Shown: positions 21,470-57,200, counted from the first letter of the stretch. The stretch is DNA of 64,000 nucleotides from Pecten maximus (GCF_902652985.1 NC_047027.1:25296001-25360000), one strand, 5' to 3'. Notes: generated from the letters alone by a model not told the origin. Program-made: numbers and translations.

Positions 21470-21635
21470 CACCTGTCAAAACACATACATAATCTACTCC
21501 ATATGCATTCTAACTCATATCTACCCATGTCAAAACATAAACACCATCTACCCCACATACAGTATAACTTATATCCACCCATGTCAAAACACATACCCAA
21601 TCTACCCCATATACAGTATAATTTATATCTACCCA
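21470..21635 (+). repeat. ~54-bp tandem repeat, left part (continues at 29294-29595)
   Basis: ACCCATGTCAAAACA..CTACCCCATATACAGTATAACT units interrupted by the LTR element. Confidence 0.85.
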
Positions 21636-22306: not shown

Positions 22307-22316
22307 CTCCTCCTCT
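22307..22316 (-). other. Polypurine tract (PPT)
   Basis: Minus-strand AGAGGAGGAG abutting the 3' LTR. Confidence 0.85.
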
Positions 22317-22488
22317 GATTTCAAGAGAAATCATTTACAACAATTCAATCATAAGATAATTTCTTAACTACAATATTCTAAATATAATACAGTATTCATA
22401 AATGAATAATCAAATCTAAACGCTATGAAACAATTTCAGACATCAATCACAGTCTTTGGAAATGATACAACACAAGAAAATGTCCGCG

Positions 22489-25400
22489 TCACTCATCTGT
22501 TTCCAAAAGTGTTACCAGTTCGGTAACTGGTCTGACATACAATACACGTTTATTGTCTCTCACAACAGCAATCTCAACCTTTCGTACTGCACAGTCGTTA
22601 CTTGGAAATGTTCTTTCAACTATTCCAACCGGCCATTCATTTCGAGAGCGCTCCCCGTCTTTTAAGAGAACCAGGTCTCCCGGTTGAAGGTTCTTGGTGT
22701 GTTTTTGCCACTTCTTTCGCAATTGTAAACCGTGAAGATACTCATTCCTCCATCTCCTCCAGAATTCCTCTGCAAGTGATTGCACGTGTTTCCATGTCGA
22801 GCGCAACACATCCTTTGTGTTGTAAGGAGGGAACGGGTTGACATCACAACTAGTCTTACTTGTCAACAGCATAGACGGCGTAAGAAGAACAGGTGACTCT
22901 GGATCACTGAATACATCCACTAACGGTCTATTGTTCACAATTGCACAAACTTCAGACATAAGAGTGGTCAATACCTCGTGTGTGAGACTTTTCCTTTGCT
23001 GTTGAAGCAACATAGAGTTCAAGATGTTCTTGGCGACACCAATTAACCTTTCCCAAGCGCCACCCATGTGAGGCGAGTAGGGTGGGTTGAAAATCCACTT
23101 GATTTTGCCGTCGGATAAGAAGTCAGCAACATGATCATTCTCAACAAATCTTGCATCAATGGCCAGATCTTCTGTCGCTCCCACAAAATTCGTGCCCCTG
23201 TCGGAACGAAATTGGATGACCGGTCCACGCACAGAAATAAACCGTCGTAAGGCGTTAATAAAAGACGAGCTGGAAAGTTGTTCTATCACCTCTATATGTA
23301 TGGCTCTTGTCACAAGACATGTGAACAACAAAGCCCATCGTTTCTGCGTTGCAGATCCTCCTCTGGTCCGCCGGAATGAGATAGGCCAAGGTCCAAACGT
23401 ATCCACACCGACATATGAAAAAGGTGGTGAAGGAGTGCATCTGTCAGTAGGAAGATCTGCCATATACTGTTGACCAAACTGACCACGAAGTTTCTTGCAG
23501 GTAACACAATTGTGAATAATAAAGTTAACCATTTTCCTGCAACTCACGACCCAATATCCACCTGTGCGAACAGCTCCTTCTGTAAACTTACGACCCTGGT
23601 GAACTACTTTTTGATGAAAATGACGAACCACCAGAAACGTCACGTGATGGCTCTTGGGAAGTATAACAGGGTTCCTTAATCCTGAGCCGATAATCTCATT
23701 GTCGATCTTGTTAAGGCGACCTCCTACATGTAAAAGTCCATCTGTACCAATAACTGGAGTAAGAGTTTTGAGAGAACTTGAATGAGGAATTTCTTTTCCA
23801 GCATGGATACGTTGGAACTCTGAACTGAATGCATCTTGTTGAGCTACTGCAATGATGGCACGCTCACTTTCTTGCAGAAATTCTGGTTCATCAAATCGAT
23901 CAGGTAAGCGTTCTCTGTCCTTCCGGATATGAGCTGCCAAGAACTTTATACGGGCAACAACTCTCACAAGTCTTTTCCAGTTTGAAAATCTGGTGAATCT
24001 CTTAGAGAATCCCTCTGGCACCTTTCCACAATCTGTCTGTTTTACTTTCTTCTCGGGAACATCTATCATATCCTCCGACTGCTCCATTTTTGAACAGTTT
24101 ACTTCAGGACGGATTTCCAAGTCATGATCCGGGTCTATTAAATCATAGCCATCCGGGGATGTTCTATGCTTGATATCGGGGCCAAGAATCCAACTAGAGT
24201 CTGGCAATAACAAAGCGTCTAGACCTCTAGTAGCTACATCTGCAGGGTTACACTCCGACGGAACAAAATTCCACTGAGTCGGTTTGCTGAACAGACGAAT
24301 CTTGCTCACTCTGTTTCCCACATATACGTAGAATCTACGACTTTCGTTTGATATATATCCAAGTACGACTTGACTATCAGAAAAGAACTGAAAGCTATCC
24401 TGAGGAATATCGAGTTGGACCCGAATGGTCTCAGCAATTTCTGTAGCGAGTACCGCAGCGCACAACTCTAATCGCGGAACTGTATGTCCATGCGTAGGTG
24501 CTAATTTAGCCTTTCCTAACAGAAAGCCAATGCTAAATCTACTAGGATCGTAAAGTTTGAGGTATGCGACAGCCGCTATCGCATCTTTCGACGCATCAGC
24601 AAACACAAGAACTTCCCTTCTCAAAGCGTCATCAAAAGAGATGTCGCAGTAGACGCGTGGTATGCTAAGATTCTCAAGGTTGTGCATAGAATTAACCCAC
24701 AAACACCACTGGCCATAGAGTGACTCAGGTAGAGGATCATCCCAGTCATTGCTTGAGGTGACGGACATCATTTCCCGAAGCAGTAGTTTTCCCCGAATAG
24801 TGAACGGCTGAGCAAATCCGAGAGGATCATATATACTATTGATTGTTGATAACAGGCCACGACGCGTGTAAACTTTCTCCACTTGGTTAACCTTGAAAGT
24901 GAACGAATCAGTTTCTGTATCCCACAAAAGTCCTAAGCTCCTTTGCGTGGGGAGAGTTTCTGTCAGGAGATCAATATCTTTGAGATCCTTAGCCAGGTCT
25001 TTCTGACAAAAAGCATTAAGCACATCCCTGCTATTTGAAGCAAACTTATGAAGTCTGATTTCTCCATTCTCTTGGAGAGCGTGTTTTGTGCGTTCCACAA
25101 TGTCAATAGCCTCAGACTGGGTCCTACATGACAACAGACCATCGTCAACATAGAAGTCTTTACCCACTAAGTTCTGCACGTCCTGATCAGAATTTTCTAC
25201 AGCCTTACGCAAGCCGAAATTAGCAACAGCAGGAGAGGCAGTGTTGCCGAAAACATGTCTTGTCATCTGATACTCAACTAACGGCTCACTCAAATCATTG
25301 TTCTTGTGCCACAAAAAACGTAGGAAGCGACGTTGCACCTCAGGAACCTGAAAGTTGTAGAACATTTGCTCTACGTCCATGGTGACTGCAATTCTTTCAC

Positions 25401-28400
25401 GACGAAATCTAAGTAAGATACCAAGCAGGCTGTTCAACATATCGGGTCCTTGTAACAGAACGTCGTTGAGCGATAAATTCTGGCACTTGGCAGATGAGTC
25501 AAACACCACACGTATACTATCAGGCTTCTTAGGATGTTGAACTGCAAACAGTGGCAAATACCATTTCTCTGTAGAATCTGGTAAAGCTGGTGCTAACTCT
25601 GCGTGCTTATTACCGAAAAGTTTCTCCATGAATTCCATAACTCTTTTCTGTTTGTCTGGGTTCGACTTGAGACTCCGATCAAACGAATTCGCTCTTTTAA
25701 GAGCCATACTCTTGTTGTCAGGCAGAAAGGGTCTATTCTTCTTAAAAGGCATGGGTGCCTCCCAATGTCCACTAGGGGTTTGTTTGAATCCAGTTTCCAT
25801 AGTGCTAAGGAACCTTTTGTCCTCTATCGACAAGCCAGGTTTCTCATCTCCCGGTACTCGTTCGAAGATAGGGTCCTCCTTCACCATGAGTTCACTCTCG
25901 CATGGCTGCAAGTATGTAGGTCTGCCGTTAGCGAACACTGATGTTTTGCTCACACTGACCTGTTCCGGTAGGTGTGCGCGACCTAAACACACATCACCAA
26001 TTACAACCCATCCAAGAGGTAACTTCTGGCCGAATGGTAGCCAGTCTCCATCGATACGTTGATCTACAACATGATGTGCAGATACCAAGTCCCTACCAAT
26101 CAAAATTTCAATTTCCACACTGTCGTTCACGGGTGGAATAAGTGACGCGATGTCTCGTAAATGACTGTAATTCTCTGCCACTTCTGGAGATGGAATTTCA
26201 CTACGATTGTTTGGGATCTCATTACACTCAATCAAACAGGGTGATTGCAGAGTACATGAACCATCAAGAGATTGTATTACATATCCAGATGCTCTCCGAC
26301 CAGAGGTAGTAAACTTGCCAGCACATGAAGTGAGTACATATTCTGCACTTGGACCAAATTCTCTAAAGGCGTCGAAGAATGCTGACGTAGCCAATGACTT
26401 ATTACTCTGGTCATCAATCATACAGTAAACATTGCGGGCTCGAGATGGCTGCCCATTGGGAAATACACTGACAAGCAGTATTTTAGCACACGACTTACTA
26501 GTACTGTGACGAGTACTACAAACCTCAGTACAGTGAGTTTCAACTCGGAGCTTCTCCTCCTCGTGGTCTTCACTAGGTATTTGATGTCGCTGACTTCTGT
26601 AATTATCTTGTGATTTCTCCCCCTCATACTGTTTCCCAGAGTCTGCGTCTGGATGAAGTATTCCGATGTGATCTGGGGAACCACAAACATTACACTTGAC
26701 AGTTTCTTTACATGTTTTCCTTGTATGGCGCTTCTGCCCGCAACACTTCAAACAGTAACCATTTTTATATACAAAGTCTTTACGATCTTTCAGAGTTCTG
26801 TTTCGGAATTTAAAACAGTCTTTCAGTAGATGATTAGAATTTTCACCATGAATAGGACATTTCCCACCTTTAGGGTTGGTTTCCGGAGTAACCTCGGTCT
26901 TCCGTGATGATATCGAAGTTTGACGATGAGAATCCTGTGACAAGGGTTTATATTTCTGTTGTGTACTAGGAACTTTGTTCGGCTTCACAAACGAAACATC
27001 AAAATCAAAACTGGGGTCGTTACGTAGACGGGCCAGATCACGCAAGTATCTTGTGAGTACTGAGAATGGTACTTGCGACGTTCGATTTGTCTCTTTGTAG
27101 CGATAACACTGATTGGCCCATTTTTCCCTCAAGCGTTTAGGTAATTTTCTAACAAAATCATTTATCCCACTAGAAGTGTCATAATAGCTAAAAACTGGTC
27201 CCAACACTGTGTCGGTTTTAATGGATTCAACCTCCGCTGCCAAATCTGATAGGTCAAAAAAGCGCTTAGTGTCATTTTCCTTAAGATCCGGAAACTGGTA
27301 TATTCGTTGTTTCAATGCTCTTTCGATAATTTCTGCACTACCAAACTCGCTATCAAGCCGCTTCCAAATTTCGTCCACAGCCTTCTGAGAATTCCTGGGA
27401 TTAGAAGCGCGTATGTTCTCTGCTTGTGTTTTAGACTCAGCACCAAGATGATTTACGAGCAGATCTAGATGTTCCAAGATAGACGCCCCAATTTCTTCCA
27501 TTACATTAAGAAAGCCGTATTTCCAGGTTAGGTACCTAGCTGGTTCATCTGTAAATTGAGAAAGTCTCTGAGGCAAAAGTTGATTTTTTGCCACTAATTT
27601 TGCTAAGTCAAATGCCTCATTTCTATTTTCAGGCTTAAACGCAACAGCACTAGGGTTAAGAACACGTGTAGTATCAGCCGCTCCAGTAGAGGGAATCTGT
27701 ACAACAGTTTCTATTGGTTCATCCTGAGTAACATCTTCTGTAGGAATAATAGGTGGAGATACATTATTGTCTTTATTCTCCTCTACATAGCGCAAAATGT
27801 GACGATTGGTCTCTGACCCAATATAACTGCCTCGCTTACTTGCAGAATCTTTATTGCTAGCATTTGAAGATCTAAAGTCAAAAGCTTTGTGAATTGCATT
27901 AAGTCCAGTCTCAGCTACTTCTAATTCTCTCTTCAGATTTAATAAATTCCTACTTGCCTGTAAAGCTGCCTCTTGTTTTATCAATTCAGCCTCCTCTTGT
28001 GCATATTTCATGCGAGATCTTGCCTTTTCAACTTTGGCTGTATGTTTTACCAACATTTCAGTCAACCGACTCGACCCTGAAACACCTGACCGTCTGGTTG
28101 ACAGCATCTTGTGTGAAATTGACGGCAACAAGGACTGTAAGTGCTCTATAAATGACGTCACTTTATCATGTAAAGCTGCAGATGTGAGACGATGAGCTGC
28201 CTCTTCACTGGCACTATGATCTGTGCGAGTCCCTTGTAAGAATTGTTCAAACTTTTTAGCTTTCGCTTCATAGCGAGCTAACAGTTTTTGTATGTCATCA
28301 ATAATTTGCTGGCCCTGGGCAAGATCTATATTTTCTGAGGAATCGATGATAAAGTCAATGTCCCTTTTGATTTTCAATAATTTGGTTGTATAATGCGACA

Positions 28401-28461
28401 CCTTTTCTTCATAAAGATTCACACCGGACTCTGTCATCTTCCTATTTTGGCGGACATCCAT
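22489..28461 (-). CDS. BEL/Pao Gag-Pol polyprotein (Gag zinc knuckles, protease, RT, RNase H, integrase)
   Basis: Three Cys/His knuckles (CPIH, CLKC, CNVC), protease MIDDQS, RT FYVDD, RNase H FADAS and PRLELCAA, integrase HHCC plus DTFGP/SDRGTNF/GGAWERL. The frame is uninterrupted; first ATGs at 28461 and 28437. Confidence 0.97.
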   Translation of the reverse strand: MDVRQNRKMTESGVNLYEEKVSHYTTKLLKIKRDIDFIIDSSENIDLAQGQQIIDDIQKLLARYEAKAKKFEQFLQGTRTDHSASEEAAHRLTSAALHDKVTSFIEHLQSLLPSISHKMLSTRRSGVSGSSRLTEMLVKHTAKVEKARSRMKYAQEEAELIKQEAALQASRNLLNLKRELEVAETGLNAIHKAFDFRSSNASNKDSASKRGSYIGSETNRHILRYVEENKDNNVSPPIIPTEDVTQDEPIETVVQIPSTGAADTTRVLNPSAVAFKPENRNEAFDLAKLVAKNQLLPQRLSQFTDEPARYLTWKYGFLNVMEEIGASILEHLDLLVNHLGAESKTQAENIRASNPRNSQKAVDEIWKRLDSEFGSAEIIERALKQRIYQFPDLKENDTKRFFDLSDLAAEVESIKTDTVLGPVFSYYDTSSGINDFVRKLPKRLREKWANQCYRYKETNRTSQVPFSVLTRYLRDLARLRNDPSFDFDVSFVKPNKVPSTQQKYKPLSQDSHRQTSISSRKTEVTPETNPKGGKCPIHGENSNHLLKDCFKFRNRTLKDRKDFVYKNGYCLKCCGQKRHTRKTCKETVKCNVCGSPDHIGILHPDADSGKQYEGEKSQDNYRSQRHQIPSEDHEEEKLRVETHCTEVCSTRHSTSKSCAKILLVSVFPNGQPSRARNVYCMIDDQSNKSLATSAFFDAFREFGPSAEYVLTSCAGKFTTSGRRASGYVIQSLDGSCTLQSPCLIECNEIPNNRSEIPSPEVAENYSHLRDIASLIPPVNDSVEIEILIGRDLVSAHHVVDQRIDGDWLPFGQKLPLGWVVIGDVCLGRAHLPEQVSVSKTSVFANGRPTYLQPCESELMVKEDPIFERVPGDEKPGLSIEDKRFLSTMETGFKQTPSGHWEAPMPFKKNRPFLPDNKSMALKRANSFDRSLKSNPDKQKRVMEFMEKLFGNKHAELAPALPDSTEKWYLPLFAVQHPKKPDSIRVVFDSSAKCQNLSLNDVLLQGPDMLNSLLGILLRFRRERIAVTMDVEQMFYNFQVPEVQRRFLRFLWHKNNDLSEPLVEYQMTRHVFGNTASPAVANFGLRKAVENSDQDVQNLVGKDFYVDDGLLSCRTQSEAIDIVERTKHALQENGEIRLHKFASNSRDVLNAFCQKDLAKDLKDIDLLTETLPTQRSLGLLWDTETDSFTFKVNQVEKVYTRRGLLSTINSIYDPLGFAQPFTIRGKLLLREMMSVTSSNDWDDPLPESLYGQWCLWVNSMHNLENLSIPRVYCDISFDDALRREVLVFADASKDAIAAVAYLKLYDPSRFSIGFLLGKAKLAPTHGHTVPRLELCAAVLATEIAETIRVQLDIPQDSFQFFSDSQVVLGYISNESRRFYVYVGNRVSKIRLFSKPTQWNFVPSECNPADVATRGLDALLLPDSSWILGPDIKHRTSPDGYDLIDPDHDLEIRPEVNCSKMEQSEDMIDVPEKKVKQTDCGKVPEGFSKRFTRFSNWKRLVRVVARIKFLAAHIRKDRERLPDRFDEPEFLQESERAIIAVAQQDAFSSEFQRIHAGKEIPHSSSLKTLTPVIGTDGLLHVGGRLNKIDNEIIGSGLRNPVILPKSHHVTFLVVRHFHQKVVHQGRKFTEGAVRTGGYWVVSCRKMVNFIIHNCVTCKKLRGQFGQQYMADLPTDRCTPSPPFSYVGVDTFGPWPISFRRTRGGSATQKRWALLFTCLVTRAIHIEVIEQLSSSSFINALRRFISVRGPVIQFRSDRGTNFVGATEDLAIDARFVENDHVADFLSDGKIKWIFNPPYSPHMGGAWERLIGVAKNILNSMLLQQQRKSLTHEVLTTLMSEVCAIVNNRPLVDVFSDPESPVLLTPSMLLTSKTSCDVNPFPPYNTKDVLRSTWKHVQSLAEEFWRRWRNEYLHGLQLRKKWQKHTKNLQPGDLVLLKDGERSRNEWPVGIVERTFPSNDCAVRKVEIAVVRDNKRVLYVRPVTELVTLLETDE

Positions 28462-28609
28462 CAGTAAACAAATTAAAGTTGAAAACAATTCAATTCTATT
28501 GGTGATACGAAGGATACATTACTACTGCTGTGTACTGCAGGCCAGGTCATCTTACTGCAGGCAAGGTCAAACTACAGCAGGCAAGGTCAAACTACTTCAG
28601 GCCAGGTCA

Positions 28610-28622
28610 AAGGATTTTTTAC
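28610..28622 (-). other. Non-tRNA primer-binding site GTAAAAAATCCTT
   Basis: Lies immediately after the 5' LTR and lacks the TGG that pairs with tRNA CCA. It is complementary to the predicted spliced LTR junction. Confidence 0.7.
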
Positions 28623-29293
28623 TGTGATGTATCATGCTTCATAATCATAAAGGACGAATAAAGTCGATGTAGACTCCCTTTATTTGCATCACACACCTCA
28701 AGAGAGGGTAAAAAACTACAAAGAAAACAAAACCAAAAATAACAAAAGTTAGGAAACCAACAGAAAGAGTAATCGTCTCGGACAGACCAATAACTGTTCC
28801 TCCTAATAAATCATGTTACAAATACAATGAAATATAACACATTATATGTTCCTACCGGATAAAATTATGAGAAATTGCTCACTATCTTTCATATTCTTAA
28901 TAATAAAGATTTAAACAGCTCAAATGAGGTTATTCGAATGTCATTTGTCCAAGTTATAACATGTATTCAATGTATAAACAAACCAGCAGACGACACTTGA
29001 TTGAAATATGGCGGGACCTACTCGGCCAAGCCTAACACGATTTACCAAACTTACAAGATGAGAATATATGCATATGACATAATAACAAGCATCATAGATA
29101 TATTATGCATTAAACCATATATTAATTATCAACACTTACTCCTTAGGGAGGCCAGTATATCCGAAAACAATAGCGTGACAGCGACGCTTCCACATGGTAC
29201 TGTAGACATGGGAACTTGTAACTAATACACTAATATGCGGATAGAGGCGGACTCTAATTTCCGGACAACAGATTCCGGACTTAGACCATCACA
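28623..29293 (-). repeat. 5' LTR containing a predicted 424-nt GT-AG intron (29139..28716)
   Basis: Donor AAGGA|GTAAGT, acceptor TTTTGTTTTCTTTGTAG|, and AATAAA at 28684-28679. Confidence 0.95.
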
Positions 29294-33203: not shown

Positions 33204-36200
33204 TCAGAGCATCTGCTTAATTAGGACGTTAAGTGAACGCAGAATTGACACAAGTCTCATTTGTCTCTTCAGATTATAACGTGAGCACGGCTTGCTGGTC
33301 CCGTAAAGGGACCGTTCTGAGAATTTAAACTTCATATTAGTAAAACATTCCATGATATATCAAAAATTCATCTTAATAAGTATATTCAATAACATAAAAC
33401 GCAAAAGAGGTTTTTTTTTTTTTTTTTTTTAGACAACGCACCTTCGAGTTCATCATATACGGCCGCATTACTTCTTGTGCCAAGGGATTCATACATTTGT
33501 CTAGAATGAGAGGAAAAATCATTCCGATTAAATGATGTGCTTTGATTTGATTACTTTTACTCATTAATTATTATTTCAATAAACACATAACACATCTACA
33601 CTGATTTCACGATTACGTCTCACATGATACTTGTGACATCGTAGTATGATCAATACAGTACGAATGTACATAAAAGAGAGTCTTTTCAACATTATTCTGC
33701 AATATTAAGCCATGCTGTAATATGCTTGGATTTTATTTTATTGAACATTGTTTTCATATGCATAATTTTGTCGAATGGCCTTGGCTGGTCTGTGCTTACT
33801 CTTACAATATATGTAATGGATTTTTTTAAAAAGAGTATGTACAGTTCACATTTGAGATTAAAGTATACATCATACTTATATCCTTTGTAAGTAAATCTAC
33901 CATACAAACCTGTCGTCAGTGGAAGCTTGTGTATTCACATTGGCTGAAACAGAGTCAATGGATAATATTACGATAGCGTATTTCAAGAACGGTTTAGCTA
34001 AGTATCGCGAGACGTTTTGATATAATAATTATAACGAGTGTTATTTCCTCAGACAAAGACATACAATAATATAATAGTTCAAAGCTCTTACATACTGCTT
34101 TATCACACCAATATATAATTGTCTCTAAGTTGTGATTATCTAGACTTTAGCAAACAGCTCTGCCTCGTTTCACTTATCTCTTTGAGAGCCGCCATCCAGA
34201 GCTGCCATTCGGCGCAAAGAAATTACTATATAGAAACATTTTCATTTATCAATCATTATGAGTGTTGTTTTGTTCAGACTAAGATATATACTAATTCAAA
34301 ATTCTTATAAACTACTTTATCACAGCAATATATATCCTTCGCTAATGTGTGATTATGGGTGTCAAGTGTCGAAACCTACGTTGGGAGGTTTCCAGGTACT
34401 GACCGTAGGCCGGTGGTTTTTCTCTGGTTAGTCCGGCTTTCCTCCACCTCCAAAACTTGGCACGTTAAACAAAACAAACCAAACCAAGTGATTATGGCGA
34501 CTTCAATTACAAGCCCTGCCTCTTTTCATTTCATTCCATTGAGAGCTTAAACCCGGACCTATCGTTCGGCGCAAACCGCTTGAAAATTTCCAGCACTGTC
34601 CTTTGACGTATAAATCCAACGTATCATAACCAGAAGGGAACACAAAGGATTGCCCCTACTCGGACTCGAACGAGCGATAAGTCCATCATAATTCTATTTA
34701 CCAATATACCCTCATACCCAACAAAACAAGCACTTCATCAGTTCAACAACAGTATGACATTCGACTTACCTGCAACATTACTACCAAGACACTCATAGTT
34801 TGATGGTGGTTCTCTTTCCTGTAGGTTCAAATCGTCATAGTGTGATCTGATCAACAAAATCACAAACATACCAGTCAGTTACAGGTGTTTATACTCACTT
34901 CACTGAATGTGCTACGTCATAATTGGTAACATTATATTAAGCTACAGATGTTAGATGTGTCATAGTATCTTGCAAAAAACAAAAACGTTGAGATCAAACA
35001 TGTACATGAATTCCATGCATCAAATTCATACCCAGTATGTTGGAAACTATTTACATCATAGATGTGACAAACAAAATATATTTACAGTAATGAATGAGGG
35101 TATCTCATTCGGAAATGGAATGCAATGTAGACATCATAAGGCATGCTATAAAAACATAATTCATAATCTGAAACATTTTGTTCTCAGCTGTAAATACTGA
35201 ATTTTGTCAAAATTAACATTTCTGATTAATAAAAACGTAAAATGGGAATTCAATCGTACCTCTCTGTTGGAATGTCATGTTGTCCTACAGGAGACAGAGG
35301 CAGGTTTACACCTATGAAATAATACATATTGAAATGAAAACCCAGCAAATCCTAAACGTCACATTATATGGCTGTTCTGCTGTTGAATAAAAACAATGAC
35401 ACATGGAATAAAATAAAAGATGCGTCTTTAAAGTTGTTACTCGAGGGATTTTTCTGACATAACTCAATATTTTTGTAATTACAAAATAACACCGATATTT
35501 ATGTTGGCATGTGTTTAGGGGATGGAAACAAGTCAACATATTTGACAAGGCAAACAGAAAAATGTCACACAAAATGGGCAAACGAAGATAAGCTATGAAC
35601 TTTTCTAAATTTCAGCGTAAAAGTTTAGATGGTTCTGCTGTGTATATAAATGGTTATTTGTTTGTATTGGAGAAACAGAAGGTAACAAAACAAACAAGAT
35701 CGCATAAATCAACTTGAGAGTTTCATTTGTATTTAAAAAAAAAAAAAAAAGTTAATCAATATGTATCCGTCGCTAATGTGTGATTATGGGGCCTTCCATT
35801 ACCAGCCCTGTCTCTTTTCATTTAACTCAGTAGTAACCAATAGACCGTCATACCCTACAAAGTAAGCACTTCATCATTGAAAAATGTAGCTGTCATCAGT
35901 TCAACAACAGTATGACAATTGACTTACCTGCAGCATTACTACCAAGACACTCATAGTTTGATGGTGGTTCTCTTTCCTCTAGGTTCAAATCGTCATAGTG
36001 TGATCTGATCAACAAAAGCACAAACATGCCAGTCATTTACATGTGATTATACTCACTTCACTGAATGTGTTACATCATAGTCGGTAAAATTAGATTAAGC
36101 TACAGATGCTAGATGTGTAAAAAAAAAAAAAAAAAAAAAAATTTGAGATCAAAACATCAACATGAATTCCATGTATCAAATTCACGTCTAGTATTGTTGG

Positions 36201-42200: not shown

Positions 42201-45200
42201 ATACCCTACAAAGTAACACTTCATCATTGAAAAATGTAGCTGTCATCAGTTCAACAACAGTATGACAATTGACTTACCTGCAGCATTACTACCAAGACAC
42301 TCATAGTTTGATGGTGGTTCTCTTTCCTCTAGGTTCAAATCGTCATAGTGTGATCTGATCAACAAAAGCACAAACATACCAGTCAGTTACAGGTGTTTAT
42401 ACTCACTTCACTGAATGTGTTACATCATAGTCGGCAACATTAGATTAAGCTTCAGATGTGTCATAGTATCTCGCAAAAAAAAAACAAAAACTTTCAGATC
42501 AAAACATGTACATGAATATCATGCATCACATTCATGTCCAGTATTGTTGGAAAATATTTACATCATAGATGTGACAAACAAAATAAATTGACAGTAATGA
42601 ATGAGGGTATCTCATTCGGAAATGGTATGCAATGTAGACATCATAAGACATACTATAAAAACATAATTCATAATCTTAAACATTTTGTTTCCAGCTGTAA
42701 ATACTGAATTTTGTCAAAATAAACATTTCTGATTAATAAAAACGTAAAATGGAAATTCAATCGTACCCCTCTGTTGGAATGTCATGTTGTCCTACAGGAG
42801 ACAGAGGCAGGTTTACACATATGAAATAATACATATTGAAATGAAAACCCAGCAAATCCTAAACGTCACAATATATGTTTGTTCTGCTGTTGAGTAAAAA
42901 ACAATGACACGTGGAATGAAATAAAAGTTGCGTCTGTAAAGTTGTTACTCGAGGGATTTTTCTCATATAACTATGTTTTTTGGTATTTACAAATTAACAC
43001 CGATATTTATGTTGGCATGTGTTTAAGGGACAGAAACAAGTCAACATATTTGACAAGGCCAAAAAAATGTCACACAAAACGGCAAATGAAGATTAGCTTT
43101 GAGCTTTTCTAAATTTCAGCGTAAGTTTTGTGAAGATTCTGCTGTGTATATACATGGTTATTTGTTTGTATTGGAGAAACAGGAGGTAACAAAATAAAAC
43201 AGATACCATAAATCAACGTGAGAGTTTCATTTGTATTTAAAAGTTAATCGGCTTAGCTTAATATACTGGACTGAACCATTTTTATTATTTTTCCTCGTCT
43301 TATTTTGAACAATTTTGGTAATGTTACCTGCTTCAGCTACGGGATTTTTTTCTCTGCCTTTCATCTCCCTAGAAACATAAATCGATATGAATGAAGAAAT
43401 GCATAATTTTTCACTGAAAAGGTATTAAATGCAAAAAAAAAAAAAAAAAATAAAAAAAATAATAATAAAAAAACAGGCGCGAGGTGTAAATGCCCTTAAT
43501 TACTGAATTTTGAATTTTGATTCTGCTTACATCTTTAGTATTCCTTAATATAACCATTTACTGCTTTGGGTATGCACATATACCTAGACTTTATTTAAGG
43601 AAATCAACATCGCGACATATAAACGGTAAAGATAATCATATCATACAATATTATATCGATGGAGATTATAATAACACTTACCTTAATGTCCGTCTACCTG
43701 CAATAGAGAAATAAAACGTAATTATTCACGAGGTAAAGAGAGATAATGCTAAACGACGAGAGAGAAAAAAAAATCAACAGATTTAAACCTTAAACGTTCG
43801 TTCGATACAGATTGAAAATATTAATTGAAATGTAATTGAAAATGAAAAAGCGGCCATCTCTAATCAACATATTTGTTTAAAGGAGTTAAGATAAAGGATT
43901 AAGAATATCAAAACAAAACAAAACAATAGTGTAAAATATTTACACTCTGTCATGTTATCAGAAACACTGGAAATAAACAAGGTACTTAAAATAATTTATT
44001 TCACAGCAAATTGTTTCTGAGACAGTTTAACCAATACCGTCACAAACATCGTTTGGGAGGACGAAAAACAACGTCTGTTTGGAGGATGTAAAAAGCAAGA
44101 ACAACGTCTGTGAGCGAGAGAGCTAGAAACACGTCTGTGGGAGGATGTAATAACTATGTCTGTGAGGGAGGATGTAAGAACCACGTCTGTGGGGGAGGAT
44201 GTAAGAACCACGTCTGTGGGGAGGATGTAAGAACTACGTCTGTGGGGGAGGATGTAAGAACCAGGTCTGTGAGGGAGGATGTAAGATCCAGGTCTGTTGG
44301 GAGGATGTCAGAACCAAGTCTGTTGGGGAGGATGTAAGAACCACGTCTCTGAGGGAGGATATAAGAACCACGTCTGTTGGGAGGATGTTAGAACCACGTC
44401 TTTGGGGGAGGATGTAAGAACCAGGTCTGTGGAGGAGGATGTAAGATCCACGTCTGTGGGGGAGGATGTAAGAACCACGTCTGTGGGGGAGGATGTTAGA
44501 ACCACGTCTGTGGGGGAGGATGTAAGAACTGCGTCTGTGGGGGAGGATGTAAGAACCACGTCTGTGGAAAAGGATGTTAGAACCACGTCTGTGGGGGAGG
44601 ATGTTAGAACCACGTCTGTGGGGGAGGATGTAAGAACCACGTGTTTGAGGAGGATGTAAGAACCACGTCTGTGGAAAAGGATGCAAGAACCACGTCTGTG
44701 GGGGAGGATGTTAGAACCACGTCTGTGGGGGAGGATGTAAGCACCAAGTCAGTGAGGGAGGATGTAAGAACCACGTCTGTGAGGGAGGATGTAAGATCCA
44801 CGTCTGTGGGGGAGGATGTAAGAACCACGTCTGTGGGGGAGGATGTAAGAACCACGTCTGTGGGGGAGGATGTAAGAACCACGTGTTTGAGGAGGATGTA
44901 AGAACCACGTCTGTGGGGGAGGATGTAAGAACCACGTCTGTGAGGGAGGATGTAAGAACCACGTGTTTGGGGGAGGATGTTAGAACCACGTCTGTGGGGG
45001 AGGATGTAAGAACTGCGTCTGTGGGGGAGGATGTAAGATCCACGTCTGTGGGGGAGGATGTAAGAACCACGTCTGTGAGGGAGGATATAAGAACCACGTC
45101 TGTGAGGGAGGATGTAAGAACCACGTCTGTGGGGGAGGATGTAGGAACCAGGTCTGTGGAGGAGGATGTAAGAACCACGTCTGTCAGGGAGGATATAAGT

Positions 45201-51200: not shown

Positions 51201-54200
51201 TGACTGTAGATCTAAAATCTACTGGAATCTTACCAGATAACAGATTTGTTATCGAAAACAATGGAACGCTGGTCTGGGTTGACGATGAATACTGAGTGAT
51301 CCTGTCAAGCAACACATTTGTTCATAGTAGAACAGCTATAACCTCAAATGTCACTTTTAATATGATATAATATTAAAAAATCCTGGTCCTGACGGGAAAA
51401 TGTAATACAGCTTACTTAGACTGCAGCTAAACGCCTTTGAGTCGAACGAGTAAGCGGCGTGAAGTCCCCGGTGTTATTCCATCCGGAACTCCTCGGGGAA
51501 TCATTTCAGTGACAATACCCTATGAGTTCAGGATGGCGTTATTCTATAGTTGTCCTTTATATATGCGGACAAGCCGACCAAACTAGTTGTGTCAATAGTA
51601 TATTACGAATAAATTTCATACATCAATCTTAACGGACCTGTTTATGTTTTTGCAGGCTTTGAAAGACATCATCAAGATGATTCGTCCTAAACAAATATAA
51701 AACCGGCTGATCCATAATTATTTTAATGTTAACAACTTTATATGCCTACCCGGTCTATCTGTTCAACCGCTAAACGGAATGGAAACGCCCGGTCTTACGT
51801 CATCAAAACATGCAGCCTATTTATAGGAAAATACCCCTGTCGAGTGGAAAAATACTGAGAAGGTCGAAAAAATAGGCCATTTTCAAAACAATCTTGTGAC
51901 CGTTCTGTTAAAGATATCGAAAAACTAAACAGATAGTTTTCTTCAGGAAACATTTATCTATTTACATGTGCATCATATATGTTTCTGGATTTTTTTTCGG
52001 AATTTTGAGGGCGATTTAAACAGAACCTCTTAGTCAAAATGACGATTTTGGCATGTTTGACCCAAAATATCTCATAAATACGAATTTCCACAGGGATACC
52101 AGATACATCCAGACCTAGATCGAGCCGAGTTTTACAATGGTTCAAAACCCCTTCAAAATTGTATATGCCATTTTTTCCACCCCCAAATCGCTACAATAGC
52201 CGGCAAAAATCGCGAATTAGCTCATACTATCATTACGTTCCGTAAGGAACGATAACGAGTTATCGCCCCTTACTACACTTCATTCTTTACTTTTCCCCCA
52301 GAAGACATGTTGCTAATTTTATTCTTTTTTTTTTCTCTATACATTTTTTAAGCTTAATGAGACAGTACTAAACGTGCATGCATTACATTTTTACATACGC
52401 CAGAATGGTTCTCTGTCATTAAACTACTCATTATTACATTTGATATCGGCCTATTTACTGAAGTTAAGATGACAGTTTCTGATTGCCTTTCTTTTCTCTT
52501 TCAGTAATCTGTGTATGTATGGAGCTATTACGCCTTTAATTTTTTCTTCGTTTTTTTTTTTTTTTTAAAGAGAATAGAGTATATTTGAGCTCATTATACC
52601 AATTTACTACTGAATGTAAACATGATATATTCAATGAGTACAACAAAATTTATATCTGACTTTATCTTACATGAACATTCTTGGTTGGTTTTACTGATAA
52701 TATCCACCACACTGCTGAGTGAGCTGTTCATTTCGTATAACGTCTGTTGCCCCTTTCGTGTTAGTAAGACGTAACGTTATGTTGGAATGTTATCACTGAG
52801 TACTGTTCTGTTGTTTCATGTCTATGACAACCGAATAAACATAAATGTCTGGGGCGGCCGGCCATTTGCTTGNNNNNNNNNNNNNNNNNNNNNNNNNNNN
52901 NNNNNNNNNNNNNNNNNNNNNNNNNNNNNNNNNNNNNNNNNNNNNNNNNNNNNNNNNNNNNNNNNNNNNNNNNNNNNNNNNNNNNNNNNNNNNNNNNNNN
53001 NNNNNNNNNNNNNNNNNNNNNNNNNNNNNNNNNNNNNNNNNNNNNNNNNNNNNNNNNNNNNNNNNNNNNNNNNNNNNNNNNNNNNNNNNNNNNNNNNNNN
53101 NNNNNNNNNNNNNNNNNNNNNNNNNNNNNNNNNNNNNNNNNNNNNNNNNNNNNNNNNNNNNNNNNNNNNNNNNNNNNNNNNNNNNNNNNNNNNNNNNNNN
53201 NNNNNNNNNNNNNNNNNNNNNNNNNNNNNNNNNNNNNNNNNNNNNNNNNNNNNNNNNNNNNNNNNNNNNNNNNNNNNNNNNNNNNNNNNNNNNNNNNNNN
53301 NNNNNNNNNNNNNNNNNNNNNNNNNNNNNNNNNNNNNNNNNNNNNNNNNNNNNNNNNNNNNNNNNNNNNNNNATTTGTAATATTATAAACTTACTTTTCT
53401 CATGAACTGTGAAACTTAGCGAGGCGCTTCCATGTGTGTTGGTTGCAGTGACGTTGTACAGCCCAAACCAGTTCTGTTGTATGCTGGTACGTGTCACTAT
53501 TGACACAGCGGTTAAATTTTTTGTCTCAAACGTGTTTTGTATCAATACGTTACTTTCCCCATTCTTAAGTTTGGTGAAAGTTGTCGATTCAGGTAGTTGA
53601 AAAGTCCACACAAAAGATGGTGATGGATTAGAGGTAAACATTGCTAAAATCGTAAGGTTTTCTGTTGTAGCTAGATCAATCGTTTGGATTTCATCCGGAA
53701 TCTGATACGGGAGTGGCTTACCTAATATGGGAAAAAATGGTGAAATTAAACGAATTATCTAAGTAAGGACAAATCAACCATACTGTTGTCCCATGTTTAT
53801 TGTACCAGAATGCTATTAATGTCCTTAATTGCAACAACATTATATCATTTAATGAAGATATTTCAATATTAAAACGAAAGCTTTTACAAAAATTGAAGAC
53901 ATATTTTCCATTTTTGTTTAACGTCCTATTAACAGCCAGGGTCATTTAAGGACGTGCCAGGTTTTGGAGGTGGAGGAAAGGCGGAGTACCCGGAGAAAAA
54001 CCACCGGCCAACGGTCAGTACCTGGCAACTGCCCCATGTAGGTTTCGAACTCGCAACCCAGTGGTGGAGGGCTAGTGTTAAAGTGTCGGTACACCTTAAC
54101 CACTCGGCCACCGCGGCCCCTCAGACAGTTGAAACTGGCCCTGACACAATGTCTACCAGACTAACGTGAACTTAACAGCATTATTCTGTGATACATTTTG

Positions 54201-57200
54201 AATATTTTCTTTAAACGAGCATGAAAACAAATGAAACTTTATTTGTGGTCAAAATCGATTATTTTTTTATAAAACTGAAATTGTGAAAGACTATGTTTCT
54301 GTCACTGTCAGTAATAACTGCTTCTATATTGTGCTGTATATTCATTTATTAACATCTTACAGTTAAACAAAAGTAAAAAATATGACTGCGACCTATATCA
54401 TGTATACAGTTAAATATATTTTTTACTGAAATTATGTGTTTGTATGCAAAAACATGTGCATGTAGCAGTGTACGGTAAAAATGCCAAATTCTGATAAATA
54501 TGGCACATGTTTTAGATATGTAAACATTGCCAGTTAACTCTACATATAACCTCTAATAAAGTATATATATTTGAAAACTGTACAACATTTGCAACATCAG
54601 TTTACTTATCCTTCAGAGCTCTATTAAAGTTTTCTGTGAGTTTTAGAGCTGTGAATACCATGGTAACAGCTTAAAAAATTCCCAAAAACTGCAAAATATT
54701 ATGATATTTGACCAAAATGGCGCAATTCTCTACACAATTTTTTTTTCTGAAACCTATTTAAAATCAAACATCGCTATCCCAAAGACAGAATTAATCTTGT
54801 TTGGACATATGCTGTAAATTAAGTTTTTCCGCTATTTTACCTTTCCTGTGGGCTTCCATTTTTCGCTGTAGGCATATCATAATACAGGAGTTATTTGCTT
54901 AACAATAAAATTGCCCATGGCCAGGCTGTCTTAATGTGATGTGCTACCTAATGACACAAACCGTACACAGCCTGTTTTTTCCGCGGATATTATTTAGTAA
55001 CTGATCTTTGTACTCACAAGTTACGCTGATGCGCAGCACATAAGTTTGCCTTTTCTTTTTACTCGTATTATGATTTTTTTTTTAATTTTTTTTTTTTAAT
55101 TTTTAGATTTTTCGAACATTTGTATCCTTCGATGAAGGTACATTTATATGTGAACTTCGCATCATACACGCAGGTTACTATATATCAATTAACATGTATG
55201 AATCGCCATTTGTATTGTATCACATTGCATATCATTGCTTTATTAATGATCCCCTACCACGATAGACTATACAACTACATACTTGCATAACAGACAACAT
55301 ATTGTATATGAACATTTAATGTATACCTGCCATGTTGAGTGTATAGTCATCACTGTCCACTTGTTTGTTACCATTAGGTAGGTAAAAGTTGGTACGTCTA
55401 CAGTACCACACAGATCCATGGTCTCCCGTCTGCTGTGGCTGTATGATCCACCGGAACGCTGTACCAAGCCTTACTCCAGACGTTACACAGGAACAGACAT
55501 CCGGTGTACAGGGGACGGCGGGGCTGACTTTAACGTTGTAACATTGGTCACCACCTATTTGTATACCACCTACTGGAGTAGTGACGTCACGACGGCGGTA
55601 AAACTGGACACTATTGGCCTCCTCTGGTACATCACACGTCAGTGTAAACTCAGTCCCAGGGACGGCGTACTCAGACGACCCGGTCAGGGTTACAGTATCT
55701 GAATATGAAATTGGATGACACGTTTAATGTGAATGTACCGCTTTTTCATTTAACGAAATGGTTAAGCATTGAGCTGTTACCAAATGGTAATATACAGTCG
55801 ACATGAATACAAGTCTGGTGACAGATTTATAGAATGTCGCAGGGTAACATAAATCATCAATCTGTCACCCAAATTATATCGACCGTATAATAACAACAGT
55901 TCAGTGCGTATGTATACATTCAAAAAGATTATTTTTTATTATTTATTTACTGTAGCATTAGACGTATTTAAATCTACCGCTTACCCTGTCACTGACGTCA
56001 TCAAGTTCAAATAGCGGAGCAAACGAAATTTTCAAAAGAAATGATATAGTCCCCCGTGTCGTTATCAGTAGCAATGACATACAATGGTTTTGGCATAGAT
56101 TTAGCTTTAAAACCGTTTTTCTGCGCAATGATATACGGTTATCATTTTGTAGTGATGCGGCATTGAATGGGTATAACTGGATAGACCCGATTCCTCAAAA
56201 ACACATATGTTTTTATCGTCTTGATATACGTTATTTCGGTAGAAAATCAGCTCTTACATTCTAAATGAAAGTCATCATGATAGAAGGTGAAAATGATTCC
56301 AAGGATATTTCGTTCGAAACATATTCCCATCTAATATAACCGGCCATATCAGTGTCGCTAATTAAGCCGACGATGATTTAATTTAACATTGGCTCGATTT
56401 CAGAGTAAGATAGGCCTTTGACATCAGTGCTAACAAAAACAAAAAGAGAATAGTAGGCCTATACATAAACAAACGGAAACCATGTTCATAATCCCGATTT
56501 TTTCACTATTTTATATAAATCCTGGACTGGTCTTTGGGCAGTGGCTCTCGCCTAATTGTTGTAGGGTGGTAGCTCTCGTCCTACGGCTCTAGGATTGTGA
56601 CTCTCGTCTTAAGGTTCTAGGGTGGTGGCAATCGCCTTATTGTCCTAGGGAGTGGCTCTCGCCTTATGGTACTATGGCGTTGCTTTTGCCTTACGATTCT
56701 AGGGTGTTGGCTCTCGCCTTACGGTTACAGGGCGGTAGTTCTCGCCCAACGACTCTAGGGCGGTGGCTCTCGTTTCACGGTGATGTGGCGGTGGCTCTGG
56801 CCATACGGTTCTAGGGCGTTGGCTCTCGTCCTACGGTTCTAGGGTGGTGGCTCCCGCCTTACGATTAGAGGGTGGTGGTTCTCGCCTTACGGTTCTAGGA
56901 CGGTGGTTTCTCGCCTTACGGTTCTAGGGTGGTGGCTCTCGCTTTACGATTATAGGGCGGTGGCTCTTGCCGTACGGTCCTAAGGCGGTGGCTCTCGTCC
57001 TACGGTTCTAGGGTGGTAGCTCTCGCTTAACGGAAATATGGCGGTGGCTCTCACTTTACGATTATTGGGCGGTGGCTCTCGTCCTACGGTCCTAGGGCGG
57101 TAGCTCTCTTCTAATGGTCCAAGGGTGGTGGCTCCCACCTTACGGTTCTAGGGCGGTGCCCCTCACCTTACGATTATATGGCGGTGGCTCTCGTCTTACG

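What the first reader, a model, noticed from the sequence alone, without database searches (positions are those of the whole stretch)
34770..42791. Ig receptor tail amplified by 7x tandem duplication of a two-exon ITAM/ITIM cassette
Seen: each ~1.2-1.35-kb unit carries a 25-nt exon (GQHDIPTE(R/G) or GQQEIATER) and a 77-nt exon (SHYDDLNLEEREPPSNYECLGSNAA). Together they make 102 nt, phase 1-1, so any number can be added or skipped in frame. Known: ITAM is YxxL/I-x6-12-YxxL/I and ITIM is S/I/V/LxYxxL/I/V. The module fits both (YDDL-x10-YECL; SHYDDL and SNYECL). Inference: an invertebrate immunoreceptor with up to 14 repeat tyrosine motifs plus a terminal ITAM, whose signalling gain could be tuned by copy-number variation or cassette skipping.
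Basis: partly seen in the sequence, partly recalled or inferred. Interest (0 to 1): 0.8.

Follow-up and report, generated by a model that had tools for sequence, protein, structure and literature searches.

The report
Scallop receptor tail with repeated tyrosine cassettes
A king-scallop (Pecten maximus) immunoglobulin-type membrane receptor gene carries seven tandem copies of a two-exon tail module with two tyrosine docking motifs each; consecutive copies are spliced into RNA, so its tail can carry far more ITAM-like motifs than any receptor I could find described.

Summary
The array is real and lies on the minus strand. It has seven head-to-tail units, alternating 1.14 and 1.36 kb, which make a 2.5-kb two-unit higher-order repeat.

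Contigs from three independent public runs carry canonical GT..AG joints: first exon to 77-nt exon, 77-nt exon to the next unit's first exon, and array to the tail end. At least two cassettes in a row therefore reach RNA.

- The small exon is 52 nt in transcripts, not 25 nt. Its acceptor lies 27 nt upstream, so the module is 129 nt (43 aa) and still phase 1-1.
- The terminal ITAM exon is phase 2. It is reached through an unlisted 34-nt exon (33910-33943).
- In this haplotype unit 2 has a frameshifted 76-nt exon, units 1 and 3 lack the upstream acceptor, and the last exon's acceptor reads GG.

The same strand upstream holds a V-set-like Ig exon, a second Ig-like exon, a fibronectin-III exon (cut by the N gap), a transmembrane exon and two juxtamembrane exons in matching phases. 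Paralogous loci hold 1 or 4 cassettes; an unplaced haplotig holds at least 12. No database protein has more than one.

The cassette fits ITIM twice. It fits ITAM only with a relaxed 10-residue spacer. Signalling is inferred, not shown. This is a new variant of a known kind.

The parts
55327..55698 (-). V-set-like Ig domain exon (open frame 55319-55723; predicted exon 372 nt, phase 1-1)
   Evidence: No Pfam hit. AlphaFold2 on 21 paralog exons gives pLDDT 87.2. The top 50 Foldseek PDB hits are all antibody, TCR or nanobody V domains, E about 1e-4, TM 0.45-0.66. At least 89 paralogous exons in the genome. Membership in the same transcript as the array is not shown.
53395..53721 (-). Second Ig-like domain exon (327 nt, AG/GTAAGT, phase 1-1)
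   Evidence: Found by tblastn. Pfam Ig_3 E 0.002 and I-set E 0.03, both below the curated cut-off. Splice sites.
52671..52872 (-). 3' part of the fibronectin-III exon, running into the N gap (52873-53372)
   Evidence: 52671-52734 matches the fn3 end of RefSeq paralogs at 78-95%. 52730-52872 is a noisy copy with three in-frame stops. That is either contig-end error or real decay. The gap was not filled.
46864..46968 (-). Transmembrane exon (105 nt, phase 1-1, donor GTAAGT)
   Evidence: 81% identical to the transmembrane segment of P0004. Coordinates. About 23 hydrophobic residues with no charged residue.
44097..46642 (.). 27-nt minisatellite (94.5 copies) inside the intron after the transmembrane exon
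   Evidence: No frame stays open through it. Also present in paralogous loci.
43682..43697 (-). 16-nt micro-exon (C-RRTL-R, stop-transfer basic residues; phase 1-2)
   Evidence: Homologous to the micro-exon needed by the P0004 gene model. AG/GTAAGT sites are conserved.
43328..43368 (-). Juxtamembrane exon (41 nt, EMKGREKNPVAEA-G, phase 2-1), the exon before unit 1
   Evidence: Matches P0004 residues 347-361.
42767..42818 (-). Unit 1 first exon (HD type).
42278..42354 (-). Unit 1 77-nt exon (SHYDDL...YECL)
41622..41673 (-). Unit 2 first exon (QE type, AG intact)
40937..41012 (-). Unit 2 second exon. Defective: 76 nt (1-nt deletion) and donor GTTAAG.
40263..40314 (-). Unit 3 first exon (HD type; upstream acceptor AT)
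   Evidence: Unit 3 is identical to unit 1.
39775..39851 (-). Unit 3 77-nt exon
39118..39169 (-). Unit 4 first exon (QE type)
38432..38508 (-). Unit 4 77-nt exon
   Evidence: Joints 37811|38432 and 38508|37760 in contigs of X8 and X14.
37760..37811 (-). Unit 5 first exon (HD type), 52 nt as expressed
   Evidence: X14 record 6: 77-nt exon, then this 52-nt exon, then a 77-nt exon
37274..37350 (-). Unit 5 77-nt exon
36617..36668 (-). Unit 6 first exon (QE type). No joint seen in the four runs.
35928..36004 (-). Unit 6 77-nt exon
35260..35311 (-). Unit 7 first exon (HD type), 52 nt as expressed
   Evidence: Joints 35311|35928 (X7) and 36004|35260 (X7, X24)
34770..34846 (-). Unit 7 77-nt exon (variant NLQE..., ...SNVA)
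33910..33943 (-).
   Evidence: Predicted. Joints 33500|33910 (X8, X24) and 33943|35928 (X24). Present in P0004.
33442..33500 (-). ITAM exon (59 nt, phase 2-1): YESL-x8-YDEL
   Evidence: Identical in three paralogous loci.
33269..33300 (-). Last coding exon (G-PASRAHVII-stop). Its acceptor is GG here and AG in four related loci.

Best explanation
This is the cytoplasmic-tail region of a Pecten maximus type I membrane receptor of the immunoglobulin superfamily, on the minus strand.

The exon chain is: V-set-like Ig, Ig-like, fibronectin III, transmembrane, 16-nt exon, 41-nt exon, then the array, then a 34-nt exon, a 59-nt ITAM exon and a last exon.

A two-exon module (52 nt phase 1-2, plus 77 nt phase 2-1; 43 aa) has been amplified by unequal crossing-over. 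This happened first as single units and then as a 2.5-kb pair of units. The result is 7 copies here, 4 at two neighbouring paralogous loci, and at least 12 on an unplaced haplotig.

Each module carries YDDL-x10-YECL. It has the same exon phases as the terminal 34-nt + 59-nt pair (YESL-x8-YDEL) and the same exon boundary, two codons before the first tyrosine. It is therefore most likely an old duplicate of that ITAM pair.

Shown: the array exists, the exons are transcribed, and neighbouring cassettes are spliced one after another in frame.

Inferred:
- After ligand-driven clustering, Src-type kinases phosphorylate the tyrosines.
- The tail then acts as a multivalent docking platform for SH2 proteins. 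A tandem-SH2 Syk-like kinase would act through the terminal ITAM and perhaps the cassettes. An SHP-like phosphatase would act through the two ITIM-pattern sites per cassette.
- The number of cassettes sets the valency and hence the gain or threshold, as ITAM number does in the T-cell receptor complex.
For: - Tandem units and their higher-order structure.
- Canonical spliced joints for first exon to 77-nt exon, 77-nt exon to next first exon, 77-nt exon to 34-nt exon, and 34-nt exon to ITAM exon. They occur in contigs of X7/X8 (probably one data set), X14 and X24.
- The exact combination of HD-type first exon and 77-nt exon seen in those contigs occurs only in the window-type array and on contig C1396, not in the two 4-copy paralogs.
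- None of the 34 genomic copies of the 77-nt exon looks like a processed copy. All but the weakest, short partial matches also match the intron flanks.
- RefSeq 'nephrin-like' proteins P0004 and P0001 of Pecten maximus show C2-set Ig + fn3 + TM + one cassette (52-nt form) + bridging exon + ITAM exon.
- The exon phases give an uninterrupted frame from the transmembrane exon to the array.
- The 77-nt exon is 77/77 identical between unit types whose introns are about 91% identical (P about 1e-3 per pair).
- Diverged paralogs keep Y..L-x10-Y..L and Y..L-x8-Y..L while other residues change.
- V-set fold.
- The genome has an SH2-SH2-tyrosine-kinase locus (C9:35.38 Mb) and an SH2-SH2-phosphatase locus (C16:32.69 Mb).
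- In oyster, an Ig receptor with one ITAM co-precipitates with Syk and drives ERK phosphorylation (PMC6994640).
Against: - No transcript spans the array, so the number of cassettes per mRNA is unknown.
- Only the HD-type first exon was seen in joints. The QE type was not seen, although contigs drop minor variants.
- This haplotype has four possible defects: the unit 2 frameshift, AT acceptors in units 1 and 3, a GG acceptor at the last exon, and stops in the fn3 remnant beside the gap. This allele may therefore be non-functional or locally misassembled.
- The junction from the 77-nt exon to the 34-nt exon seen in X24 carries the C variant found on C1396 and the paralogs, not the T of the window's unit 7.
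- No protein in 5.8 billion or 1.84 billion database entries has more than one cassette.
- The 10-residue spacer lies outside the usual ITAM consensus.
- The link between the V-like exon and the tail rests on strand, order, phase and one compact paralog, not on a transcript.
- Tissue, ligand and phosphorylation are unknown.
Confidence: 0.6

Rival explanations
1. The expansion is recent, neutral or decaying. The array is a by-product of unequal crossing-over in a fast-duplicating receptor cluster. This allele is a pseudogene or makes only short or NMD-targeted products. Functional family members use a single cassette.
For: - Unit 2 frameshift and weak donor, AT acceptors in units 1 and 3, GG acceptor at the last exon.
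- Stops in the fn3 remnant.
- One first exon on C1396 has a 1-nt deletion, and the single-copy locus at 25.49 Mb has lost both splice sites of its first exon.
- Both annotated proteins have one cassette, and no multi-cassette protein exists in the databases.
- Units 1 and 3 are 100% identical, so they are very young.
Against: - Joints from a 77-nt exon to the next unit's first exon prove that multi-cassette RNA exists in three studies.
- Contig depth over the cassette exceeds that over the tail-end exons (61 vs 16 in X8; 23 vs 9.5 in X24). The tool warns that contig depth is a poor measure.
- The 77-nt exon is better conserved than its introns.
- Arrays of 4, 4, 7 and at least 12 units all keep open frames in nearly every unit.
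- The defects are single-base changes in a long-read assembly of a repeat and lie partly beside a gap, so they may be errors.
Confidence: 0.2
2. The motifs are not immunoreceptor motifs. In an adhesion-type (nephrin/Neph-like) Ig-fn3 receptor they act as other tyrosine-based signals. They could be acidic pY-D/E-x-L sites for Nck/Crk-type adaptors that drive actin assembly, where valency controls condensate formation. Or they could be unphosphorylated YxxL endocytic sorting signals.
For: - NCBI names the paralogs 'nephrin-like'.
- The ectodomain is Ig + fn3.
- All four tyrosine motifs have acidic residues at +1/+2 (YDDL, YECL, YESL, YDEL).
- From my own knowledge, not tested here: this recalls nephrin's YDxV Nck sites, and every one also fits the YxxL/I/M/F/V sorting pattern.
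Against: - The name reflects only ectodomain similarity. The window has two Ig-like exons, not nephrin's eight Ig domains (my own knowledge).
- The paired arrangement and fixed spacing (x10, x8) are conserved across diverged paralogs. That is expected for tandem-SH2 binding and not for single-SH2 or AP-2 sites.
- The V-like exon belongs to a family of at least 89 clustered, fast-diverging exons. That pattern is typical of recognition receptors.
Confidence: 0.15
3. The copy number is an assembly artefact, and the real locus has fewer units.
For: - Units 1 and 3 are identical over 1145 nt.
- There is a scaffold gap and a noisy contig end 10 kb upstream.
- No public DNA run holds more than half of the region's 31-mers.
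Against: - Four separately assembled arrays (7, 4, 4 and at least 12 units) share the same alternating unit structure but carry private variants.
- Unit pairs other than 1 and 3 differ by 1.5-9%.
- Multi-cassette RNA exists.
Confidence: 0.05

Closest known systems
CgIgR (also called CgIgIT2) of the Pacific oyster (PMC6994640; review PMC11999971)
   Same: A bivalve type I Ig-superfamily receptor with an ITAM in its own cytoplasmic tail. It is the experimental precedent that such a tail recruits a bivalve Syk and activates ERK.
   Different: CgIgR has five Ig domains and one classical ITAM. The scallop gene has a V-like exon, an Ig-like exon and an fn3 exon. Its tail has up to seven (at least twelve on another contig) extra two-tyrosine modules encoded by a tandem exon array. 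No sequence relationship was tested.
TCR zeta chain (three ITAMs) and Xenopus FcR-gamma with an added second ITAM (PMC4536121)
   Same: ITAM number was raised by internal duplication of ITAM-coding exons. [quoted passage not shown]
   Different: Vertebrate ITAMs have an x7 spacer and their boundary splits the first tyrosine module. Here both YxxL motifs lie in the second exon, the boundary is two codons upstream, and the spacer is 10 in the cassette and 8 in the terminal exon. Vertebrate copy number is 2-3 and fixed. Here it is 4 to at least 12 and differs between loci or haplotigs. Zeta is a signalling subunit with a charged transmembrane residue, whereas this protein carries its own ectodomain.
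Hydractinia Alr family (bioRxiv 10.1101/2022.03.04.482883, also PMC9546547)
   Same: A large clustered invertebrate family of single-pass proteins with unusual V-set and I-set domains that Pfam largely misses, an Fn3-like fold, one exon per domain, and ITAM or ITIM motifs in diverse, exon-shuffled tails.
   Different: A different phylum, with no detectable sequence similarity tested. Alr tails have single or overlapping ITAMs, not a tandem cassette array.
Nephrin / Neph (the name NCBI gives the paralogs)
   Same: An Ig + fn3 ectodomain, a single pass through the membrane, and several acidic tyrosine motifs in the tail.
   Different: Domain number does not match. Orthology was not tested. The name comes from automatic annotation.

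Membership tests
ITAM (immunoreceptor tyrosine-based activation motif) | Two YxxL/I motifs | tested here: met
   Cassette: YDDL and YECL. Terminal exon: YESL and YDEL.
ITAM (immunoreceptor tyrosine-based activation motif) | Spacer of 6-8 residues (x7 in PMC4536121; x6-9 in the Alr paper) | tested here: not met
The cassette spacer is 10 residues (NLEEREPPSN). Only the terminal exon meets the rule, with a spacer of 8.
ITAM (immunoreceptor tyrosine-based activation motif) | Acidic or Asn residue at -3 of the first tyrosine (D/E/NxxY) | tested here: not met
   Cassette E-R-S-H-Y has Glu at -4. Terminal D-D-R-Q-M-Y has Asp at -4 and -5.
ITAM (immunoreceptor tyrosine-based activation motif) | Located in the cytoplasmic tail, after a transmembrane segment | tested here: met
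   The transmembrane exon 46864-46968 is followed by exons in continuous phase: 1-2, 2-1, then the array. Paralog protein P0004 shows the same order.
ITAM (immunoreceptor tyrosine-based activation motif) | [quoted passage not shown] | tested here: inconclusive
   The unit is two exons, but the boundary lies two codons before the first Tyr and both YxxL motifs are in the second exon.
ITAM (immunoreceptor tyrosine-based activation motif) | Phosphorylated, then bound by the tandem SH2 domains of Syk/ZAP-70/Shark | not testable with these tools
   Only the presence of an SH2-SH2-tyrosine-kinase locus at C9:35380592-35388768 was shown.
ITIM (immunoreceptor tyrosine-based inhibitory motif) | (S/I/V/L)xYxx(I/V/L) | tested here: met
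   SHYDDL and SNYECL in every intact cassette. The terminal exon's QMYESL and AVYDEL do not fit.
ITIM (immunoreceptor tyrosine-based inhibitory motif) | Recruits SHP-1/2 or SHIP when phosphorylated | not testable with these tools
   An SH2-SH2-phosphatase locus exists at C16:32687816-32710513.
Immunoglobulin-superfamily type I receptor | Ig-fold ectodomain | tested here: met
   V-like exon: model pLDDT 87, and all top PDB matches are V domains. Pfam finds nothing for it, and only sub-threshold Ig_3 for the second exon.
Immunoglobulin-superfamily type I receptor | Ectodomain, transmembrane segment and tail in one transcript | tested here: inconclusive
   Same strand, order and phases. A compact paralog has a V-like exon 5-6 kb upstream of cassette-like and ITAM-like exons. 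No transcript links them here, and an N gap interrupts the fn3 exon. No signal-peptide exon was found.
Nephrin / Neph | Eight Ig domains plus one fn3 (nephrin) and orthology to it | tested here: not met
   The window holds two Ig-like exons and one fn3 exon. P0004 has two Ig-like domains plus fn3. The domain count for nephrin is from my own knowledge.
Tandem exon-cassette array (symmetric, in-frame) | Head-to-tail units, each with splice-competent exons whose summed length is a multiple of three and whose phases match | tested here: met
   52 + 77 = 129 nt, phase 1 to 1. AG/GT sites are present in 5 of 7 first exons and 6 of 7 second exons. Consecutive inclusion is seen in RNA.

The most novel reading that the evidence does not exclude
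Cassette number is a heritable, polymorphic 'valency dial'. Scallop haplotypes would carry receptors with 4 to more than 12 ITAM-like modules (8 to more than 24 tyrosine sites). Unequal crossing-over in the 2.5-kb repeat would then continually generate alleles with different signalling gain or threshold. In addition, the two-exon ITAM unit with its boundary just before the first tyrosine may be homologous to the split-exon ITAM of vertebrates. That would date this exon architecture to before the protostome-deuterostome split.
Probability: 0.2. Interest if true: 0.85.

Novelty: new variant of a known kind. Interest (0 to 1): 0.62.

Why it matters
ITAM-bearing Ig receptors are known in bivalves, and raising ITAM number by exon duplication is known in vertebrates, where it reaches two or three copies. 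In five full-text paper searches and four protein-database searches I found no receptor whose tail is a long tandem array of ITAM-like exon cassettes that differs in length between loci or haplotigs.

If the cassettes are functional, the locus is a natural experiment on how motif valency sets receptor gain. That question is currently studied with engineered T-cell and chimeric antigen receptors.

The locus also shows that automatic annotation misses such arrays. The only annotated relatives carry one cassette.

Tried and rejected
- Tandem Repeats Finder could not see the array because the period exceeds 500 nt. The repeat finder did see it.
- The 27-nt minisatellite at 44.1-46.6 kb was considered as a coding Ser/Thr/Pro stalk. 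It was rejected because no frame stays open and it lies in an intron after the transmembrane exon.
- A direct splice from a 77-nt exon to the ITAM exon was rejected because the phases do not match.
- Protein searches for a multi-cassette product found only two single-cassette Pecten maximus proteins. These were phmmer of the 46-aa open frame around the 77-nt exon against 1.84 billion representatives, and word searches with P0001, with the P0004 tail and with the 46-aa frame. P0002 is an unrelated repeat protein.
- Pfam on the V-like exon found nothing. BLASTP of that exon against P0004 found no similarity.
- I first took contig C1396 for the other haplotype of this locus. Its 3' flank is closer to the paralog at 25.45 Mb (99.9% vs 98%), so I call it only a haplotig of one of the duplicated loci.
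- Exons were not joined for any search or fold. The conceptual spliced protein was neither searched nor modelled.
- The N gap was not filled.
- Papers on mollusc ITAM arrays were searched. None was found.

Full report
**Organism and place.** The window is G000:C13:25296001-25360000 of a 918-Mb genome. Proteins encoded by paralogs of this gene are named by NCBI as 'nephrin-like [Pecten maximus]' and sit on a contig of the same length as C13. The organism is therefore the king scallop.

**The observation.** The repeat finder shows seven copies of every segment between 34.7 and 43.2 kb. Start-to-start spacing alternates about 1358 and 1142 nt. Each unit has a stretch ending ...PTER/G followed by GT, and a 77-nt stretch preceded by AG and followed by GTAAGT.

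The units are of two alternating types, with GQHDIP (HD) or GQQEIA (QE) in the first exon. The real repeat is therefore a 2.5-kb pair of units. Units of the same type are 96-100% identical, and units 1 and 3 are identical over all 1145 nt. Units of different type are about 91% identical in their introns, yet 77/77 identical in the second exon. That is modest evidence that this exon is under constraint or is homogenised.

**Transcription and the corrected exon.** I laid Logan contigs of four runs on 33300-39299. X7 and X8 give identical figures and are probably one data set. X14 and X24 come from other studies. The joints seen all have CT..AC ends on the plus strand, which is GT..AG on the gene's strand:
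- 36004|35260 and 38508|37760: first exon to 77-nt exon.
- 35311|35928 and 37811|38432: 77-nt exon to the next unit's first exon.
- 33943|35928: 77-nt exon to a 34-nt exon.
- 33500|33910: 34-nt exon to the ITAM exon.

The expressed exon is therefore 52 nt, and the module is 129 nt or 43 residues. Nine extra residues (VNLPLSPV plus the split Gly) precede GQHD.

X14 record 6 reads 77-nt exon, then 52-nt exon, then 77-nt exon. A joint from a 77-nt exon into a following first exon can only arise in RNA with at least two cassettes. The runs are only guessed to be RNA, but exact canonical joints are hard to explain otherwise. None of the 34 genomic copies of the 77-nt exon looks like a processed copy. 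All but the weakest, short partial matches also match the flanking intron.

Only HD-type first exons appear in joints. QE-type exons have intact sites but were not seen. Contigs drop minor variants, so I draw no conclusion from that.

**The end of the tail.** The ITAM exon (33442-33500, YESL-x8-YDEL) begins with one base that completes a codon, whereas the 77-nt exon ends with one base. I therefore predicted a bridging exon of length 1 mod 3 and found 33910-33943. The contigs confirm it.

A further exon (33269-33300...PASRAHVII-stop) ends the protein in paralog P0004. Its acceptor is AG in four related loci but GG in the window. The X24 contig's match stops at the ITAM exon's donor, which is consistent with splicing onward. 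The acceptor side lay outside the stretch I laid.

**The rest of the gene.** phmmer of the open frame around the 77-nt exon against 1.84 billion proteins found one relevant hit, P0001. A word search added P0004. P0004 (444 aa) has a V-like domain, C2-set Ig, fn3 and a transmembrane segment. These are followed by RRKLRKMRGRENNPVAEA, one cassette in the 52-nt form, the bridging exon, the ITAM exon and the last exon. Its gene lies at C13:29.60-29.61 Mb.

Mapping these proteins on the window gives, on the minus strand:
- the fn3 end (52671-52734);
- a transmembrane exon (46864-46968);
- a 16-nt micro-exon (43682-43697);
- a 41-nt juxtamembrane exon (43328-43368).

All have conserved splice sites, and their phases run 1-1, 1-2 and 2-1 into the array. 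Upstream lie an Ig-like exon (53395-53721; Ig_3 E 0.002, below cut-off) and a 135-residue open frame (55319-55723).

Pfam finds nothing in that open frame. A model built on 21 paralogous exons has pLDDT 87, and its best 50 PDB matches are all immunoglobulin V domains. This V-like exon has at least 89 copies, nearly all on C13 between 24.7 and 30.6 Mb. One compact paralog has such an exon 5-6 kb upstream of cassette-like and ITAM-like exons.

I could not show that the V-like exon and the tail share a transcript here. The stretch 52730-52872, next to the N gap, is a noisy copy of the fn3 exon with three stops. It may be contig-end error or real decay. No signal-peptide exon was located.

**Copy number.** The 77-nt exon occurs 7 times here and 4 times at C13:25.404-25.408 Mb. 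It occurs 4 times at 25.450-25.454 Mb, once each at several other loci, and 12 times on the unplaced 44.7-kb contig C1396. C1396 starts inside its array, so 12 is a lower bound.

The downstream flank of C1396 is 99.8-99.95% identical to the 25.45-Mb locus and about 98% to the window's. Its upstream units resemble the window's. I treat it as a haplotig of one of these duplicated loci. Either way, the same cassette array is assembled at very different lengths within one individual's genome.

**Defects in this haplotype.**
- Unit 2's second exon lacks one base and has donor GTTAAG. If included, it shifts the frame and a stop follows in the next cassette.
- Units 1 and 3 read AT at the expressed acceptor.
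- The last exon's acceptor is GG.

All are single-base changes in a long-read assembly of a repeat. I could not check them against reads.

**Motifs.** Each intact cassette has YDDL-x10-YECL. Both tyrosines fit the ITIM pattern (SHYDDL, SNYECL). The pair fits ITAM only under a relaxed spacer rule. The consensus quoted for classical ITAMs is D/E/NxxYxxL/I-x7-YxxL/I (PMC4536121), or x6-9 (bioRxiv 10.1101/2022.03.04.482883). The terminal exon fits (x8).

Diverged paralogs keep both arrangements while changing other residues, for example DYEYL...SYEQL and LYEFL...VYEEL.

The cassette and the terminal 34 + 59-nt pair share three features: the phases (1-2, 2-1), an ...(D/E)R boundary two codons before the first Tyr, and acidic residues after each Tyr. 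The cassette therefore looks like an old duplicate of the ITAM pair. In vertebrates the classical ITAM is also always split over two exons near the first tyrosine (PMC4536121). Whether that resemblance is homology is open.

**Mechanism.** This part is inferred. Clustering would lead to tyrosine phosphorylation, which would create a multivalent SH2 docking platform. The genome has the needed kinds of partner by domain order: SH2-SH2-tyrosine kinase at C9:35.38 Mb and SH2-SH2-phosphatase at C16:32.69 Mb. In oyster, an Ig receptor with one ITAM co-precipitates with Syk and activates ERK (PMC6994640).

The alternatives are a decaying or neutral expansion, Nck-type or sorting motifs in an adhesion receptor, and misassembly. 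They are weighed in the rival explanations.

**Comparison and novelty.** The closest known systems are oyster CgIgR (one ITAM), TCR zeta and Xenopus FcR-gamma (ITAM number raised by exon duplication to 3 and 2), and the Hydractinia Alr family (unusual V-set/I-set/Fn3 receptors with ITAM or ITIM tails). I found no description of a long tandem array of such cassettes that differs in length between loci or haplotigs. No database protein has more than one cassette. I rate it a new variant of a known kind.

**Limits.** Exons were searched one by one by reference. The single reads call covered units 4-7 and the tail end only.

Noticed in passing
window 21632-29290: A BEL/Pao LTR retrotransposon with an open 2009-aa frame (22492-28518, minus strand; Peptidase_A17, RVT_1, DUF5641). 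It is flanked by near-identical repeats at about 21.6-22.3 kb and 28.6-29.3 kb. It is absent at the matching place of haplotig C1396, where about 1.2 kb stands in for 7.7 kb.
   Followed up: partly
window 44097-46642: A 27-nt minisatellite with 94.5 copies, lying in the intron between the transmembrane exon and the 16-nt micro-exon. Homologous arrays lie at the same place in the paralogous loci at 25.45, 25.49 and 29.61 Mb.
   Followed up: partly
window 34388-34483; similar copies near 49157-49393 and 53932-54160: A short interspersed element with enormous contig depth in the laid runs (about 1e5 in X7/X8, 1.5e4 in X14). It is probably an abundant SINE-like repeat, and it lies in the intron after unit 7.
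   Followed up: no
window 62739-62810 (minus strand): An ITAM exon of the next gene upstream (YESL-x8-YEEL), with the same phase-2 acceptor and a possible phase-1 donor. V-like exons of that neighbour lie at C13:25378330 and C13:25381300. The window therefore sits in a tandem cluster of such receptors.
   Followed up: partly
window 52730-52872, beside the N gap 52873-53372: The sequence next to the scaffold gap is an error-rich or decayed copy of the fibronectin-III exon. Compared with the paralogs it has many indels and three stops.
   Followed up: partly
window 5423-6467 and 18601-21423 (plus strand): 18-nt repeats that stay open for about 300-350 codons as Thr/Pro/Ser-rich (TTTSPP-like) mucin-type sequence. 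Each follows a similar about 110-aa open frame. A 32-nt satellite (7614-12731, 160 copies) lies between them.
   Followed up: no
window 14992-15594 (minus strand): An intronless open frame with an RNA 2'-phosphotransferase Tpt1/KptA domain (PF01885, E 2e-18) between tandem repeats.
   Followed up: partly
G000:C9:35380592-35388768 (minus strand) and G000:C16:32687816-32710513 (minus strand): Candidate Syk/Shark-like gene (two SH2 exons, then a tyrosine-kinase exon) and SHP-like gene (two SH2 domains, then tyrosine-phosphatase exons). They were identified by domain order only.
   Followed up: partly
G000:C13:25492838-25493395 (locus L007:4838-5395): A single-cassette copy on the opposite strand. 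Its first exon has lost both the acceptor (AT) and the donor (AT), and no ITAM exon was found nearby. It is probably a dead fragment of the family.
   Followed up: no
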